NCBI RefSeq assembly: GCF_003918875.1 | Contig: NW_025766270.1 | Span: forward strand, 868,001-932,000 | Reading direction: 5' to 3' | DNA: 64,000 bases | Source of the DNA: Haliotis rubra | Taxonomy: Eukaryota | Notes under the pieces: generated by a model | The model's database searches: none | The model's input: the letters and a program-made list of their open reading frames with translations, nothing else | Told to the model about the DNA's origin: nothing | Part shown: piece after piece, positions 2,512-12,340 of the stretch | Layout of the letters: each line of letters starts with the position of its first letter | Numbering within the stretch: position 1 is the stretch's first letter | Made by a program: the position numbers and the translations under genes

Positions 2512-4751
2512 ATGTCAGCAATGGCGGGTCTCCTGTGTCTAATGCTATGGTTCGGGGTGTGTGCTGCGGCTGATCTCACAAAGCTGGAATGGTCTGACTG
2601 CGGTATGTGTACTTCCTAATTGTCATGACAAAATGTCCTGTGTTAATGAATTAGCAGATGTTTGTTCCCAGCGAAATTAACCTTGAAACTGAGCAACGTG
2701 GCTTATCTGGTTGTGTTTTCTTGAGATCTTGAAGGACACCACTAGCAGGAGTGACGTTTGGTTCTAACATGTTTAGCTAGAAACTAGTTTCAGAGCATTC
2801 GGACATATACTCTCCCAAAAAAGAAACGCATCTGGGAATTTCAACTGTATTTTTATGTTTATTTTGAAACATCTTGTAGGCTTTATGAGTCAATGAAATA
2901 TAGCGAAATTGCACACTGGGAATGCAGACTTAACCGTCTTTGGCACCAACTCGAGGAAAGTCAGTTTGAGTGTCACATGGAGACGTGTGGTGGCGCTGAA
3001 ATCAATACCTCGTGTGACCACCGTGGGCATCCAGAACTGCACGGCATCGCCTCGGCATCGAACGAATAAGACTCAGAATCTCGCGTTGCCCAATCGCAGC
3101 CCACTCTGCCTGTAGTGCCTGTGCGAGTTGCTGAAGTGTCTGGGGCTGAGGGTTACGGCGTCGCACCCGTCTGTCCAGGGCATCCCACAGATGTTCGATC
3201 GGGTTTAAGTCCGGTGATCTTGAGGGCCAGGGGAGCACATTGATGTTGTGGTTCTGGAGGAAGTCTCTAGTGTGACGTGCTGTGTGGGGCCTGGCATTGT
3301 CCTGTTGAAACAACTCCCTCTGGCGATCAATGATTGGAAGGAGGTGTGGGCGTAGGATTTCGTCACAGTACCGTTGAGCTGTCAGGTTTCCCTGTATCAT
3401 CACCAAATCACTTCTCCTACGGCAGGTGATCTCTCCCCACATCATAACACTTACCCGGCCGACTCTGTCCACCTGGGGAACGCAAGCGTCGACGAAACGT
3501 TCACGTCGACGTCTGTACACCCGCATTCTTCCATCGCGTCGTTCCAATAGAAATCGTGATTCATCACTGAACCAGATTCTACGCCAATTCGGTAGGTTCC
3601 AGGCCTGAACGTTGGTGCACCATTGAACTCGATGTCGACGATGTTGTTGTAGAAGCACAGGGCCAAAATAAGGTCTTCTGGCACGTAAACCAGCCTCTCT
3701 CAACCTATTCCTGACGGTCTGTGCAGAAAGCCTCCTCAATCCGGGTATTTGTCGAGCGGTACTGGTCGCCGTAGCTGTTCGATGACGCAGGTGATGTACC
3801 CGGATGTAGCGATCCTGCGCCGCAGTGGTCGCTCGAGGTTCGCCCACTACGAGGGGGCATCTGCTACCGCATTCTGCCGGCGATATCTCTCCCAGAGCCG
3901 TGAAATGGTGCTTTGGTGAACATTCATGCGTCGGGCAACTGCACGTTGAGACTGGCCAGCCTCAAACAAACCAATGGCGATATGACGGTTGGCTTCACTT
4001 AGACGTGGCATTGTGCGTTCGTCAACAATATTCCAAATACAGTGAATAATCGACAGACAGCGATCAACCTTTTATACACATCATTGAGACTATCTGATCC
4101 CAAACTTTCACGTGCATTGCATGTAAATTGTGTATTCTGTGACACTACACGCCGAAATTGAAAATCATGCTGTTAAATACGGGTATTTTACGGATGGTGC
4201 GTTTTGTTGTGATGTTTCAAAACATAAACACCATAGGACTCATAAACAGAACAAAACATTTTGTAAAATGAATCACGTTTTAATTCATTGCTACATGAAA
4301 TTGCTATTTTCATGATGCGTTTCTTTTTTGGGAGAGTATATTATCACATTCCAACAGAACGAAATGTTTGTTGCTAAAATTATTTTTCATTGCTTACCTT
4401 GGTCTTTTTTTTCCTTCTATTTTTCTTACTTTTTTTCATGATTCTCCAAAAACATTCTTTACATGTTTAGTATACAAATTATACAATTACCTTTAATACC
4501 TATTTTTACATAAGGTGACTGTACGGCCAGTCTTCACCATAGTAACTGTGTTGTTACTAATGTGTACTGATATGGCTGTAAGTCTTCCATACAGTAACTA
4601 TATCCCAGTATTCTCAAGTATGACATGCATTAAACACAAAGATTTGGCAATCCATCTTACTTTATCATCAACATGAATGTTTAACATATTCTGCATATTT
4701 GGGCCATGTTTGAACCACATCTCTGGAGTGTGATGGCTTGTATGTGGGAAA

Positions 4752-4782
<31 letters not shown>

Positions 4783-5581
4783 CGTAAAAACAAATGGTGT
4801 AAACCTTGGTCTAATGGAAGTCCTATGTAGTCACTGGTGCTCGTGACAGAGTTGACTGAATGTGCAGCATGGACAGACACAAGGAGGTAACGCTAATGAA
4901 AATGTTATGAGGTTTTGTAGGCTTTTGGGGAAACCAGGAAGGAACAAAGACACAAAATGTATTTACATTTTTCCATCTACACTGTATTTGCATCCGTTTG
5001 ATTAAAAATGGCACACACCTACTTTGGATCCCAAACAGCTTCATTAGCTCATGTAAACAATGAAGAGTAAGTGAGTGAAGGTTTTATATCACACTTATGC
5101 TAAGACCACGATATGGCTGGATATTGGCATCTCTTGGGAAAAATCGATTTCTTTACACACAAATTATCAAGTTAATTAATCTAATTATGCGCTGATTTTT
5201 ATCAACTTTTGATATTTTATATTGTCATCGCATGTCGATGAATTACAAAACGAAAGTAGGGCTCATTGACATGCTCAACCTAATAGTCCTGTCTACAACA
5301 GAGCTGGTACGTGTGACCCTAATATTGAACTTCAGGATCCGCTTCTGGCCTCACCATCCACAAAATCGACATCACCCCAATGCCCATCGTTGCCCCCGGT
5401 GACATGCGCCTCACCATCAACGCGTCGACGACGAGGAAGCAGTTGAACCAGATGAAGTTGTCGGTGCACATGAAGAGGGATACTTTCCTTCTCAACATCC
5501 CAATACCCTGTCTGTTTCATGTCGGATCATGGTGAGAAATCCAAACAATACCAGGTGTACACACACGCCTCAACATGCTTC

Positions 5582-5624
<43 letters not shown>

Positions 5625-8600
5625 GTAAAGATCCGGGTTGCAATTGGTCGTCTGCAACCCATGCTTGTCGTAAGAGACGACTAACGGGATCGGGTGGTCA
5701 GAATCTCTGCCTTGGTCGACACATGTCATCGTATGTCAATTGTTCAGATTGATGTATCATGCTGCTGATCACTGAATTGTCTGGTCCATCACTGAATTGT
5801 CGATTATTTTCAGACCGCCGCGATATAGCTGGAATATTGCTGAGTGCGGCGTAAAACTAAACTCACTCACTCACTTGCTAAATACGTAATTAGTAATACC
5901 TCGGTTCTGTAGCTCACTCGTGTATTCGGTCAACAGTGAAAAGTACCACCCAGTAATACATCAAAAATTTCAGTCAGGAGAGCTTAAAACTGAAAATTGC
6001 AGCCTTACTAGCCACATAAAGAAACTGTGCATTGTCAAAATATTATCCCAGTTGATAAGTACGATAACAATGTCAAAGGTACATATAAACTTGAGACCAT
6101 AACAAGTCGGGAGAATTTCAATTGAAAAGTCAATCACAATGACGTCACGAGTCCACAAGCGGGACAGGGGTCAAACGACCATGTCACAAGCTCAATAAAT
6201 GGTATGTCCACCATCGGCATTGAGAACAGCAGTGCATCGACGACGCATAGAGCCTATCAAACGTGCAAGGAAGGCTTGTGGGATGTCACGCCAGGTCCTC
6301 TCAAGTTCTGTTGCAAGGTCAAGGACGTTATCTGGCGGATGAGGAAGACGGCGTAGACGTCTATCCATCTCGTCCCAAACATGCTTTATCGGGGAGAGAT
6401 CCGGTGAATTTGCAGGCCAAGGCAGTAAGTCAACGTTGTGGTGTTGCAAGAAATCCATAGCAACCCTTGCCGTATGAGGGCGGGCATTGTCCTGTTGGAA
6501 TGTTAACCCAGGGCCATGACGTTGCAGAAAAGGAATTGCCACAGGTCGAAAAATCTGACCCCTGTAGCCCACACCAGTTAAGTTGCCCTGAACAATCACC
6601 AAAGGAGTTCTTTGGCGTGCTGTTATTACACCCCAAATCATCACGGAACCACCACCAAAGCGATTCCTCTCCAAGACACAAGCCTGTGCATAACGTTCTC
6701 CCACGCGTCTATAGGCGTTGACGTCCATCACTATGGGAAATGTTAAACCTGGACTCATCTGTAAAAACAACATTTCTCCACCAAAACAAGGGTCTGCGGA
6801 CATGATTTCGGCACCACATTCGGTGAGCTTGTCGATGAAGTTGTGTCAGGATAGGCCGTATGGCGGGACGTCGTGGTCTGATCCCGTGATGACGTAAACG
6901 TTGTCGAACTGTGTTGGGGTGGATACGGCGAAGTCCTTGGATGGTTCGGGCAGTCATCACTGCAGTCTGAAACCTGTGGCGAAGATGGGTCACCCTTATC
7001 CATCTGTCCTGTCTTGGCGTTGTTACACGTGGACGTCCAGAACGTGGCCGATCGATGACGTCATTTGTGTTCTGGTAGCGTCTCACCAGTGAAGAAATGG
7101 TGTTCCGGTGGCAGTGGAAATGTGCAGTCACTTGTCGTTGAGACATTCCCCCACGGACCATCCCAATGGCCTCATGACGTTGTGCAGACGTGAGCCTTGG
7201 CATGCTATGCGTTTTAATAGCCGTTTAATTTTTTGAACGATCGCAAGGGCAGTGGTTGAGCTTTCCAAAGTGACAGTATTGTGTGGCATTCATTTGCTGT
7301 TTCTCTTTCCCGGAATGCACGTGCAACGACGTATTGCACGTCTTAAGGACGAACCCACTGACGTCACGGAAGGTGACACGTGCATGTATGCTGGATACAT
7401 GTCACTAATCTCTGAGTTTAAATCCTTATGTGTCTACACAGGTTTGATAAATTTAGATTTTAAATGTTTGTTTGCACAGTTTCTTTATGTGCCTAGTATA
7501 TTTACTCCAAACGCTAATCCAGTGACTTTTTCTAAAAAGGAAAAAAAAGTTGAAAAGAAATGACGAAATTCCATTATAAACCATACCCTTCAATGTTCCT
7601 TCCTCCAACCAGCACCTACGACGACACATGCACGCTCCTGGCGACGATGCAGAAGGAGAACTGGGCCGGCATCATGGGCGACGTCGGGCGTCAGATCCAA
7701 CAGATGTTGGCCTCGGTGGGGATCACGACGTATTGTCCTGCTGTAGTGCAAAACATCGTCCTCCAGGACTACGTGCTGAAGATGCCGGCCGTTCCCTCAG
7801 TGTTGTCGTGGTTTGCCGAGGTGAGTGTCACCTCCGTGTTGTCACATCCGTGGTGAGTGTCACCTCTTTGTTGTCTTGGTTTGCCGAGGTGAGCTGAGTG
7901 TCCCCTCCGTGTTGTCGTGGTTTGCCGAGGTGAGCTGAGTGTCCCCTCCGTGTTGTCGTGGTTTGCCGAGGTGAGCTGAGTGTCACCTCCGTGTTGTCTT
8001 GGTTTGCCGAGGTGAGCTGAGTGTCACCTCCGTGTTGTCATGGTTTGCCGAGGTGAGCTGAGTGTCACCTCCGTGTTGTCTTGGTTTGCCGAGGTGAGCT
8101 AAGTGTCCCCTCCGTGTTGTCGTGGTTTGCCGATGTGAGCTGAGTGTCCCATCCGTGTATCACACTTTATCTTACCTTCATGTAAAATACTTTAATTTCA
8201 TTGGTCAATGACGGTTTAACAAGTTTCTGTGTCACCCTCCCACGAGGGTGACAACTGGAAAAAATATTACCTCCCAGGAGGGTGACAACTGGAAAAAATA
8301 TTACCCGCTGCCACGGCAACCGCCAAGCTCTCCGCCGAGAAGCTGAAGCGCTAACAATCGTATGACGTCATAATATGACGCATGCCGTGCCCGGAGTTCG
8401 AAAACCGTTCGATCAGGTGTTTTTGTGTTTACTTTGTACAGATTTATTTTACCGACTTTAACTGCTTTATTTAAGCTATTTTATACATTGAGTGGTTTGC
8501 ACACTCAACTTAAACATAATTAACCATTTCTATAGCAGTTTTATGTTTGTCAGAATATGTTTCACTGATGTTAAAAATCCAGTCGAGAGGCAGACGCCAT

Positions 8601-10519
8601 TTTCTTTGCATGTCATATAATCGTAGCGATCTTTAACATAAAATAATATGATATTTTGTACATTTAACATGGCGGTAAGATAAATACGTTGTATGCTTCT
8701 CCCTCGGGTAATTCGGTTTGATGTACGCTTGTTTGTAGCAGTGTCACCTGAGCCGGTAGGCATACAACTTATAGTAACTTCCACAACATCCAGTTCTCCT
8801 GATTGCATTCAGATCGCTTTGAGCTTAATGAATTCTTGCGGCGTCAGGCACTTCTTTGTACAAATTCTGTGAAATGCGTGTGCTTCCGGTAGTGAAAGAC
8901 ATCCTTTTCGTGAACACCTGGTGTCATCGCTGATTTCCAGTGATCCATTCATAGAAGTTTGTAGCTATTATTTCAGTCTGCATCAAATGGAGTTTGTTTG
9001 TAAGGATAGTCTAGACTGGTACTGTTTCACACTGAAGGTCTATGTTCTTATATTCATCAACAAACACGGAAAGGTATTTTAGAAAACGCTTTCTGTTTGC
9101 AACATGAGGAAGGCGATTTCCTCAGTAATGCATCATCCTTGTTTTAGACTGACTGTTAGAATGAGTTAAGTCAATGCGAATCCGTCTTTCGTGGTATAGA
9201 TGAGCCTACCTTATTCAACCTCAGAGTGGGTTTAGCCTGCAATAACCATCAGGCCATACACATTGTTATTATACATATAGTGTCGTACTAAGTAATGCTA
9301 GCTTGGACTCGGTGATAGGGAGAGCGGTCAAACCAAGATTTCATGCATCGGTATAAATAAAAAGTATATCAAACAAGTGTTTAAGTGGGCTATAGTTACA
9401 TACAATGTTTTTAATGAACATGGGTAGATATCTCTGGTTGATGGGGCGTGAATTGCCAACTGGAACTAAAACCTTTAAACTCGGAACTTCTTCAGCCACA
9501 TATTGAACTGATGCTGTGGCTTGATGTTGGAAAATATACATCTGTTTGCTATTGGTACGTCTGTCGTCTATTATTGGTGATAGCTCGATGGCCCGATGAT
9601 CCCCTTCATTCAAGTTCGGTTCGTAAAAAAAGCATGGCTGGGTCACAAAAAGCACTATTCTTCTTGGGACCAGATAATTCAGTCACGTTGATTCCCTTTC
9701 ACCTTTTCTTCTTCTGGAGGATATGTGGATCGGGTGGTCAGGGTACCTGGTTGATTGTGTGCTATCGTATAGCTCAGTATATCAATCACTGGTTTGTTCG
9801 TTGTCGACTACCTACAGTCTGTCGTCATAATACAGTGTTATTGTTGTGTTAAACAACAAACAAACGAACGACAACAAGACTGATCCTACCTTGCTTGTTT
9901 GGCGCAATCATACCACGCCTTGTTTTGGAGAGGGAGTATTTGGACTCTGCCATTTGCATAGCTGACATTGTCTCCGTGGAATTAGTTCATCCTATAGTTT
10001 CTAATACATCTTGAAATTTGCAAGCAAGACAAGTGTTAGCAGACATAAAGTTTGAATCGAATGTCTGGGGCTGTTACTTCCCTTGTGGTCCATGGTTCCA
10101 CTTACCCGTGAAGGTCCGGGTTAGAATATTGATCTTCAGCAACCCATGCTTGTTGTAAGAGGCGACTAACGGGATCGGATGGTCAGGCTCGCTGACTTGG
10201 TTGACACTTGTCGTCGGTTCCCAATTGTGCAGATCGATGCTCATGCTGTTGATCACTGGATCGTCTGGTCCAGACTATTATTTACAGACCGCCGCCATAT
10301 AGCTGGAATATTGTTGAGTGCGGGGTAAAACTAAACTCACTCACTCATGGTTTCACCTTCTCTCCTGTACAGGGCAACTACGAGGCGACTGCCACAGCCG
10401 TGGACACAGCGACTGGGGAACAGATGTTGTGTCTCAACCTCAAGTTGACGGTGAAGGAGAAGAAGGAGCCGTGCACGGGGTGGCTGTGCGGACGTCGGCG
10501 CCGTCACAGTCAGCACTAG
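2512..10519 (+). CDS. GM2A: GM2 ganglioside activator-like secreted ML-domain lipid-binding protein, 4 exons (2512-2602, 5336-5531, 7613-7820, 10373-10519), 213 aa
   Basis: Hand-spliced with GT-AG sites and matching phases (1,2,0). Signal peptide MSAMAGLLCLMLWFGVCAAA, then LEWSDCG...IDITPMPIVAPG...IPCLFHVGSCTYDDTC...LKMPAVPSVLSWFAEGNYEAT...MLCLNLKLTV. This is the GM2A/ML-domain pattern (WxxC, PxPxxxPG, PCxxxxGSCTYxDxC, GxY). One-to-one orthology is not established. Confidence 0.85.
2808..4338 (-). mobile_element. Tc1/mariner (DD34E) transposon in GM2A-like intron 1
   Basis: Perfect TIRs TACTCTCCCAAAAAAGAAACGCATC at both ends, TA flanks, internal transposase. Confidence 0.95.
3002..4011 (-). 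pseudogene. Tc1 transposase, frameshifted near 3840-3860
   Basis: MPRLSEANRHIAIG... paired-like HTH from ATG 4011; two +1 bases in the (A)PRSGRPR linker; catalytic WFSDESRF, QQDNARPH, SPDLNPIE with 34 residues between D and E. Confidence 0.9.
5584..5622. repeat. (AC)n microsatellite
   Basis: Direct. Confidence 0.95.
5622..5875 (+). mobile_element. SINE-like element family 2
   Basis: CCGT(G)AAGATCCGGGTT...CAACCCATGCTTGTCGTAAGAG...GCTGGAATATTGCTGAGTGCGGCGTAAAACTAAACTCACTCACTCAC; homologous to 10105-10347 and shares its 3' tail with family 1. Confidence 0.85.
6006..7498 (-). mobile_element. Tc1/mariner transposon in GM2A-like intron 2
   Basis: TIRs TACTAG(C/G)CACATAAAGAAACTGTGCA at 6006-6031 and 7473-7498; transposase inside. 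Confidence 0.92.
6192..7203 (-). pseudogene. Tc1 transposase, frameshifted near 6715 and catalytic E changed to K
   Basis: ORFs 6709-7203 (HTH, RSGRPR, FTDESRF) and 6192-6803 (QQDNARPH...SPDLSPIK). Confidence 0.9.
7800..8158. repeat. 41-bp minisatellite derived from the GM2A-like exon 3 end plus its splice donor
   Basis: Unit GTGTTGTCGTGGTTTGCCGAGGTGAGCTGAGTGTCCCCTCC, about 8 copies. Confidence 0.92.
10105..10347 (+). mobile_element. SINE-like family 2 copy just upstream of the exon 4 acceptor
   Basis: Homology to 5622-5875; approximate TSD CATGGTTCCACTT / CATGGTTTCACCTT. Confidence 0.85.
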
Positions 10520-10737
10520 ATGTACGATGTCTACAACGTCAACATCGCCATCGCAAGACCAGCACATTCGTCAACATCCGTCACTTTCCGTTGTCTCTAA
10601 AGGATGGTACGAGTTGTCACACGTTACTAAATTTGATAACGTATTTATCACATCAGCTATTTCTTTTGTATTAATTAGTGTATTCACTGCGTGCCATAAA
10701 ACCGTTGGTTTTAAATGAAAGATCGGCATATAGAAAC

Positions 10738-10796: not shown

Positions 10797-11626
10797 CATA
10801 TATACTGGACAAAATAAGTTAGGGATATTGGTATTTTTATGATTTGACTCTCTGGAACCGCCAGTGTAGTCAGAACTCTGGTGATTAGTAGGCGTTTTTT
10901 GAAAAATATCATTTCATCTCGGTTTCACCCAAATATTTCCCTGATTTCTTGACGTTCTAAGAGAACACTACAAAGAACATGAGAAATGTGTTCACTTCTT
11001 TGAAATTACTGATCTCTCCATCATGACACCAAGTCCCATGTCAGCAAAACGTCTGTGATATTTTGTCTGTAACATTTCTGCAGATGTAAAATTATTTCCT
11101 ATTATTTCTGGGTGTGTGAACAAGGCTTCGCTGCAGTGTGTGAATCCACAGACGCCCATGTACGTCTCCTGAGGTTACACGTTATCCTCTCTGGATTCGT
11201 ACAGGTTTACATCAACGTAGCATCGGCGAACTCACAAGGTATTATATAGAGGTATATAGAGATATAAGGTATATAGAGAGTATTTCCGTTAAATCACGGT
11301 GTCGGTGGAAAGGCAACTTCAGTGACTTCAAACCCCACATTCAGTAGGCGGATCCATTGAAACTCTCGTGAAAACGGGTGAAAATGAAGTGTGACGCGCA
11401 TGCACGCACGCACGCACACACATACACACACCCCTACCTCCTTCTCAAGAGAGGGCTCCCCATTTATCTAAAAGCTGTATCCGCCCTTGCATTCTATTGT
11501 TGCACACTGTCACAACACAGTGATTCTCTACTGATGGCACAGTATAATTCCTCTTCGGACGTCAATGGACCCTAGCCTTCCCTAATGCCGTCCCATCTTG
11601 TCCTGGGGGATGAAAGCCTGGACTCT

Positions 11627-11787
11627 AGTGAGTGAGTGAGTGAGTTTAGTTTTAGTTTTAGCAATATTCCAGCAATATCGGCAGGGGAACCAGAATGGGC
11701 TTCACACATTGTAGTCATGTGGGGAATCGAACCCGGGTCTTCGGCGTGGCAAGCAAACGCTTTAACCACTAAGCTACCCCACCGTCC
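11627..11787 (-). mobile_element. tRNA-derived SINE family 1
   Basis: Reverse-complement A/B boxes and (GAGT)n tail. Confidence 0.88.
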
Positions 11788-12340
11788 TGCTAAGTCAAGG
11801 AAAGAAGGGTTGGACAAACGTGACTCCTTACTGTCCAGGTCACATTTATGTACTGGCGCTCAGTCATACAATCATTAACGCAACACCACTTTGAACCGTT
11901 TTTTCACCATTGTTGGAACTACATGTAATACGATATATATTACGCAAATAAGAGGATTTGTCTGTCTATCTGTTTTCTTAACACACACACTTGCCGACTA
12001 GATTTTAAAACTCTAAGAGCAGAAGAAAAATATGTTCCTATAATCACATGAAAGTTTCTCATCAATACGCTGATCTAATTCTGAGTTATCCACTGAATAT
12101 ATTCTTCATCTAATTTACTTACCTGTAATTTCTCTTTCAGTCATATTTTTGTAAAAGAAAAAAGGGAAGAGATGAAATAAACACATCATACCTATAGAAA
12201 TCAGTCAATTCACTGAAGCATTAGCGCAGCAAACCCCGGGAACCAGGCTGCAGTTGCTGCGGTACGTCATAAATCTGGGCATTGTTCAGTGAAGCGTCAG
12301 TAAAATCCCTTTGTTTCATGGCCACGATACAGTTGATTGT

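What the first reader, a model, noticed from the sequence alone, without database searches (positions are those of the whole stretch)
10451..10519. GM2-activator-like protein ends in a peptide-hormone-like tail: KKEP-CTGWLC-G-RRRR
Seen: after the last ML-domain strand (MLCLNLKLTV) the frame continues KEKKEPCTGWLCGRRRRHSQH*. Known: vertebrate GM2A stops shortly after that strand, and Gly followed by a basic cluster is the convertase plus PAM amidation signal. Inference: processing would leave an amidated 6-residue disulfide loop (C-TGWL-C-NH2). It could stay on the lipid carrier as a membrane or receptor tag, or be released at the upstream KK as EPCTGWLC-amide. That would make a lipid-binding protein that is also a propeptide.
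Basis: partly seen in the sequence, partly recalled or inferred. Interest (0 to 1): 0.72.

Follow-up and report, generated by a model that had tools for sequence, protein, structure and literature searches.

The report
Abalone lipid carrier with amidation-type tail
An expressed abalone gene for a GM2-activator-like lipid-binding protein ends in a short tail whose cysteine loop and glycine-plus-basic processing signal recur across molluscs, which suggests that the whole protein, not a free hormone, ends in an amidated hydrophobic tip.

Summary
Window 10373-10519 (+) is the last of four coding exons of a secreted GM2-activator-fold protein of 213 aa. It reads on past the last beta strand into KKEP-CTGWLC-G-RRRR-HSQH-stop. 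A spliced RNA contig joins exons 2, 3 and 4 exactly at the predicted borders. The Haliotis rufescens orthologue keeps the tail: within it there are 4 synonymous changes, 0 replacements and one codon indel after RRRR.

The tail is not a one-off. In 24 of 30 tail-bearing mollusc homologues (chiton, bivalves, gastropods, cuttlefish), a hydrophobic or aromatic motif is followed by Gly. After the Gly comes either the stop codon (with 0-2 basic residues) or at least 3 basic residues plus a short, unconserved extension. This is what convertase, carboxypeptidase and PAM processing would require. Tail cysteines are always 0 or 2. Nemertean and brachiopod relatives, and the canonical abalone GM2A-like genes, have no tail.

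The upstream KK is not conserved, so release of a small peptide is unlikely. My best reading (about 0.55) is that the mature carrier ends in ...CTGWLC-amide. This is inferred from sequence only; no mass spectrometry data exist. I rate it a new variant of a known kind.

The parts
2512..2602 (+). Coding exon 1: ATG, signal peptide, the conserved W-S-D-C motif and the first base of a Gly codon. The donor GT is at 2603-2604.
   Evidence: Sequence read. tblastn of P0066 residues 4-33 gives 93% identity. The paralogue's exon 1 was found by tblastn.
5336..5531 (+). Coding exon 2, the first half of the beta cup. It enters in phase 1 and ends with TG before the donor gtgaga.
   Evidence: Pfam ML domain PF02221 at E 6e-4 on this exon alone. 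RNA contig piece at 5335-5530. P0066 is 88% identical.
7613..7820 (+). Coding exon 3, the helical insert and strands. Its first base completes the Cys codon started in exon 2. The donor is GAG|gtgagt.
   Evidence: RNA contig piece at 7612-7818. 65% identical to the paralogue on C2600. The profile of this exon found 62 relatives.
10373..10519 (+). Coding exon 4: the last two strands plus the tail and the stop codon.
   Evidence: The RNA contig piece at 10371-10636 follows exon 3 directly in the contig.
10472..10489 (+). CTGWLC, the putative 6-residue disulfide loop.
   Evidence: The identical motif occurs in a distant paralogue on C2445, in scallops, Patella and cuttlefish. Tail Cys count is always 0 or 2.
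10490..10504 (+). Gly plus RRRR: a putative amidation donor and furin-type convertase site.
   Evidence: Gly followed by at least 3 basic residues in 16 listed proteins, counted with this window's gene and its C2445 paralogue, from about 11 lineages. Gly followed by stop or 1-2 basic residues in a further 14. In the tail, 0 replacements against H. rufescens.
10505..10519 (+). HSQH and stop: a short extension that would be discarded after cleavage.
   Evidence: The only indel in exon 4 against H. rufescens is the His codon here. Extensions differ in length and sequence between lineages.
10520..10636 (+). 3' untranslated region, minimum extent.
   Evidence: The RNA contig of X17 reaches 10636 (table 8).

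Best explanation
This is an expressed four-exon gene for a secreted lipid-binding protein with the GM2-activator beta-cup fold. It belongs to a mollusc subfamily that has added a C-terminal module: a small Cys-x4-Cys loop or a plain hydrophobic stretch rich in Trp, Phe and Leu, then Gly. After the Gly comes either the stop codon or a furin-type basic run and a throw-away extension. Inferred pathway: a convertase cuts after RRRR in the secretory pathway, a carboxypeptidase trims the arginines, and PAM converts the exposed Gly. The mature 20-kDa carrier then ends in ...CTGWLC-amide. The uncharged hydrophobic tip most likely helps the carrier dock on membranes or partners, or caps its lipid pocket. 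It stays on the protein and is not released as a hormone. Shown: the gene model, expression, fold, and conservation of the motif and of the Gly context. Inferred: cleavage, amidation, the disulfide and the role of the tip.
For: Gene and expression. Fold: the model of orthologue P0066 has pLDDT 89.5; the best Foldseek hits are human and mouse GM2 activator, E 1.5e-14, TM 0.85; the profile against PDB gives E 2.5e-28. Tail conservation. The processing logic is internally consistent. Every protein with an extension after the Gly has 3-5 basic residues, and every protein that stops there has 0-2. The state after the Gly (stop or basic run) is mixed among related lineages on the tree, for example Pinctada against oysters, chiton against abalone B, and caenogastropods against limpets and abalone, while the Gly is kept. 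Purifying selection: 4 synonymous and 0 replacement changes in the tail against H. rufescens. The mollusc carboxypeptidase and PAM are described as similar to the vertebrate enzymes, and the same signal is used to predict amidated mussel peptides (PMC5577615). The copper monooxygenase family is present in this genome.
Against: There is no protein-level evidence for cleavage or amidation. Six tailed homologues lack the Gly context: the abalone paralogue on C2600 with its H. cracherodii orthologue, octopus, Ruditapes, P0026, Solemya and one chiton copy. Amidation is therefore dispensable in some lineages. PAM substrates are mostly small peptides made in regulated-secretion cells, and the expressing tissue is unknown here. 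I had no model coordinates, so where the tail sits relative to the lipid pocket is not known. One search shows the enzyme family, not PAM specifically.
Confidence: 0.55

Rival explanations
1. The tail is not processed. The Cys loop and polybasic run act as they are, for example by binding anionic membranes or glycans, or as a sorting signal.
For: Basic runs of 3-5 residues are kept in abalone, limpets, scallops and oysters. Scallops also conserve the residues after the run.
Against: At least 11 homologues end in Gly with no basic residue at all, and two more have only 1-2. The basic run is therefore not the conserved element. Extensions after it are unconserved between orders, and the only indel against H. 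rufescens lies there.
Confidence: 0.18
2. Convertase and carboxypeptidase trimming occur but there is no amidation. The protein ends in a free C-terminal Gly that is conserved for a structural reason.
For: The same conservation pattern as for the best explanation. Sequence alone cannot tell Gly-OH from an amide.
Against: A terminal Gly placed 0, 1 or 3 residues after the last Cys, or after Cys-free motifs, has no fixed structural position. Peptidyl-Gly in the secretory pathway is the known PAM substrate (established knowledge; PMC5577615).
Confidence: 0.15
3. One reading: cleavage at the upstream KK also frees EPCTGWLC-amide as a signalling peptide, so the gene is both carrier and prohormone.
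For: KK lies 3 residues before the loop in both abalone orthologues. A Tegillarca-like clam has KR directly before the loop.
Against: No dibasic site precedes the loop in scallops, Littorina, Batillaria, Dreissena, octopus or Pecten B. The lysines sit in a charged linker right after the last strand. The motif occurs on no other gene of this genome. A mollusc neuropeptide catalogue does not mention GM2.
Confidence: 0.07
4. Artefact: read-through into non-coding sequence, or a dead gene copy.
For: None found.
Against: A spliced RNA contig, an intact frame, the annotated orthologue, a synonymous excess and phylum-wide conservation.
Confidence: 0.01

Closest known systems
Vertebrate GM2 activator protein (GM2A; PDB 1G13, 1TJJ, 2AGC)
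   Same: Signal peptide, four coding exons, the beta-cup fold (TM 0.85), profile match at E 2.5e-28, and three of the four disulfide positions invariant.
   Different: The vertebrate chain ends 2 residues after the last strand. The mollusc subfamily lacks one Cys pair, has a longer helical insert encoded by exon 3, and adds the 10-25 residue tail. Whether it assists glycolipid hydrolysis is untested.
C-terminal amidation signals of mollusc secreted peptides: cone-snail toxin precursors ending Cys-Gly-basic (from my memory); mussel myticalins (PMC5577615)
   Same: Gly followed by basic residues and a discarded extension, read by convertase, carboxypeptidase and PAM. In cone snails this gives a disulfide-bonded Cys-amide end.
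   Different: Those precursors yield peptides of 10-40 residues after an upstream cut. Here the Gly sits at the end of a folded domain of about 170 residues with no conserved upstream cut.
Canonical tail-less GM2A-like genes of the same genome (three copies on contig C2013)
   Same: ML-domain exon 2 (29-32% identical), a vertebrate-like Cys pattern in exon 3, and the same exon 4 start.
   Different: In the one copy whose exon 4 I located, exon 4 ends 5 residues after the last strand's Leu-Thr with no Cys loop, Gly signal or basic run (L018).

Membership tests
GM2 activator / ML domain (PF02221) | Sequence match to the family model or to solved GM2A chains | tested here: met
   The profile of 25 homologues, including the orthologue, against PDB gives GM2A chains at E 2.5e-28. 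PF02221 is precomputed on P0066. Window exon 2 alone scores 20.5 bits, just under the 22.7 cut-off.
GM2 activator / ML domain (PF02221) | Beta-cup fold | tested here: met
   AlphaFold model of orthologue P0066 (about 91% identical to the window protein), pLDDT 89.5. The top seven Foldseek hits are GM2A, then NPC2. The joined window protein itself was not folded.
GM2 activator / ML domain (PF02221) | Four conserved disulfides of GM2A | tested here: inconclusive
   Six Cys columns are invariant in 25 sequences, matching three pairs by position. The fourth vertebrate pair is absent, and the tail adds a new pair.
GM2 activator / ML domain (PF02221) | Cofactor activity for glycolipid hydrolysis, or lipid transfer | not testable with these tools
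   Needs biochemical assays.
Amidated peptide precursor (prohormone type) | Signal peptide and C-terminal Gly followed by basic residues or stop | tested here: met
   Signal peptide in exon 1. The Gly context is conserved in 24 of 30 tails.
Amidated peptide precursor (prohormone type) | Conserved basic cleavage site upstream that frees a small peptide | tested here: not met
   KK is present in abalone only. Most lineages have no dibasic site before the loop.
Amidated peptide precursor (prohormone type) | Amidated product detected | not testable with these tools
   Needs mass spectrometry. No paper in the library holds the tail strings.

The most novel reading that the evidence does not exclude
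The gene is dual-purpose. Besides carrying lipid, the precursor releases the cyclic amidated loop as a signalling or defence peptide in at least some lineages, namely abalone with KK and ark clam with KR before the loop. The tailed subfamily would then be a previously unseen source of mollusc bioactive peptides.
Probability: 0.08. Interest if true: 0.85.

Novelty: new variant of a known kind. Interest (0 to 1): 0.58.

Why it matters
If the mature protein is amidated, this would be a phylum-wide case of PAM acting on a folded lipid-transfer protein rather than on a small peptide. It would also give a simple chemical route, removing the terminal charge, for tuning how a beta-cup carrier meets membranes. 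GM2A-like genes are among the most highly expressed transcripts of mussel digestive gland (PMC5549309), so the modification would concern an abundant protein. The claim is cheap to test by re-searching existing mollusc proteome data.

Tried and rejected
1. The same tail on unrelated genes. The loop pattern alone is no commoner than its reversed control (57 against 49). The loop plus Gly and two basic-like codons occurs only at this locus. Four loop hits on C2445 at about 2.27 Mb lie in a non-coding tandem repeat with stops.
2. The word-index protein search cannot take single exons because of its length window. I therefore used the exhaustive profile search with exon 3 of two paralogues, then full-length hits as queries.
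3. The exons were searched by reference, and orthologue P0066 stood in for the fold.
4. Runs of two related organisms (X2, X7) cover exon 3 only in part and say nothing about their tails. I could not see the contig letters inside the tail.
5. No model coordinates are returned, so the position of the tail relative to the pocket could not be examined.
6. One search shows an expanded copper monooxygenase family, but I did not single out PAM.
7. Literature: no paper links GM2A-like proteins with amidation in substance.

Full report
**Observation.** After an acceptor cag, window 10373-10519 (+) reads as one frame of 48 codons plus TAG. The frame holds the last two strands of an ML-type domain. It then reads KEKKEP, CTGWLC (10472-10489), Gly (10490-10492), RRRR (10493-10504), HSQH and stop.

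**Gene model.** There are four coding exons on the + strand.
- Exon 1, 2512-2602: start codon, signal peptide and the conserved Trp-Ser-Asp-Cys.
- Exon 2, 5336-5531.
- Exon 3, 7613-7820.
- Exon 4, 10373-10519.

All borders are GT-AG and the phases fit. The Cys codon split between exons 2 and 3 restores a family-invariant Cys. The product is 213 aa.

Two results confirm the model. The annotated Haliotis rufescens protein P0066 ('ganglioside GM2 activator-like', 214 aa) aligns to all four exons at 88-94% identity. An 815-nt contig of run X17 lies on 5335-5530, 7612-7818 and 10371-10636 as adjoining pieces of one record (table 8). That contig is therefore a spliced RNA that includes the tail and at least 117 nt of 3'UTR. 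The window is thus from another abalone species. Its genome is 1.38 Gb.

**What the protein is.**
- Exon 2 alone touches Pfam ML domain PF02221.
- A profile of 25 homologues hits solved GM2 activator chains at E 2.5e-28. The vertebrate chain ends two residues after the aligned last strand.
- An AlphaFold model of P0066 (pLDDT 89.5; about 72 over the loop region and 52 at the very end) matches human and mouse GM2 activator best: E 1.5e-14, TM 0.85 on the target.
- Six Cys columns are invariant, which corresponds to three of the four vertebrate disulfides.

**The tail is a family feature.**

Within this genome:
- A distant paralogue on C2445 ends CTGWLC-S-G-RRRR-LA.
- A close paralogue on C2600 keeps a CTDWFC loop but has no Gly signal.
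- One of the three canonical GM2A-like genes on C2013, the only one whose exon 4 I located, ends without any tail.

Elsewhere:
- Gly, then 3-5 basic residues, then a short unconserved extension: abalone A and B, Lottia, Patella, four scallops, a second Pecten gene, Ostrea, Saccostrea and Crassostrea.
- Gly followed directly by stop: Littorina, Batillaria, two transcript-derived snail proteins, Mytilus, Dreissena, two Potamilus genes, Pinctada and a chiton.
- Gly-Lys-stop in an ark-clam-like protein, and Gly-Arg-Arg-stop in cuttlefish.

In total, 24 of 30 tailed mollusc proteins carry this signal. The residues before the Gly are always hydrophobic or aromatic: a Cys-x4-Cys loop, or Cys-free GWLL or GFLF. 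Tail cysteines number 0 or 2, never 1, which fits a disulfide within the tail. The six exceptions still end in hydrophobic residues, sometimes followed by basic ones. Nemertean and brachiopod relatives, Pomacea and Argonauta have no tail. On this sample, the module therefore arose within molluscs.

**Why I read it as a processing signal.**
- A basic run long enough for a furin-type cut appears exactly when there is something to cut off. When the frame stops at the Gly, 0-2 basic residues are present, which a carboxypeptidase alone would remove.
- On the tree, the well-supported clade B (99/97) mixes Gly-stop and Gly-basic forms. So do gastropods and bivalves in the remainder. The Gly is kept while its downstream context changes repeatedly.
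- Between the window and H. rufescens, the tail has 4 synonymous changes and 0 replacements. The single indel removes the His just after RRRR. The intron and 3'UTR flanks are strongly diverged.
- PMC5577615 describes the mollusc carboxypeptidase and PAM as functionally like the vertebrate enzymes, and applies the same rule to gill peptides.
- The copper monooxygenase family is present here, although I did not single out PAM.

**What is not supported.** Release of a small peptide needs an upstream cut. The KK of abalone is not conserved in most lineages, and the motif is found on no unrelated gene of this genome. A free hormone is therefore unlikely as the family's purpose.

**Mechanism and limits.** Most likely the mature carrier ends in the loop with an amidated Cys. 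The uncharged hydrophobic tip would serve membrane or partner contact, or cap the lipid pocket. Cleavage, amidation, the disulfide and the role of the tip are all inferred. No tool gave model coordinates, no tissue is known for the RNA runs, and no paper in the library mentions these tails.

**Verdict.** This is a real, expressed and conserved feature: a new variant of the GM2 activator family. The amidated-protein reading is testable by re-searching existing proteome data. I score interest at 0.58.

Noticed in passing
window 7854-8158: A 41-bp minisatellite of 7.4 copies at 94% identity. Its unit repeats the last 21 nt of exon 3 together with the GT splice donor, so seven spare donor sites follow the real one. 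The RNA contig uses the first donor, at 7820/7821.
   Followed up: partly
window 3005-4071 (-) and 6195-7224 (-): Tc1/mariner-type transposase remnants (DDE_3 and Tc3 HTH domains) sit in introns 1 and 2. The copy in intron 1 has a 319-aa open frame. The H. rufescens orthologue spans about 4 kb against 8 kb here, so the introns have grown by insertions.
   Followed up: partly
window 5588-5981 and 10119-10330; also 1327-1500 and 11575-11860: SINE-like repeat copies that read as recurring pseudo-peptides. They reach very high summed depth in RNA contigs of all four runs. One copy ends only about 40 nt before the exon 4 acceptor.
   Followed up: no
G000 contig C2013, about 663-781 kb (L009-L011, L016-L018): Three tandem, more vertebrate-like GM2A-like genes. 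A vertebrate-like Cys pattern was seen in the exon 3 of one copy (L017), and a tail-less exon 4 was found in another (L018).
   Followed up: partly
G000, many contigs (C558, C1158, C2121, C2183 and others): About 40 exon-level matches to the copper type II monooxygenase C-terminal domain, in clusters, which suggests a large expansion of this enzyme family.
   Followed up: no
G000 C2445:2267595-2270672 (L013): A tandem repeat whose unit happens to encode the same six-residue loop in one frame, but with stop codons around it. It is non-coding and unrelated.
   Followed up: yes
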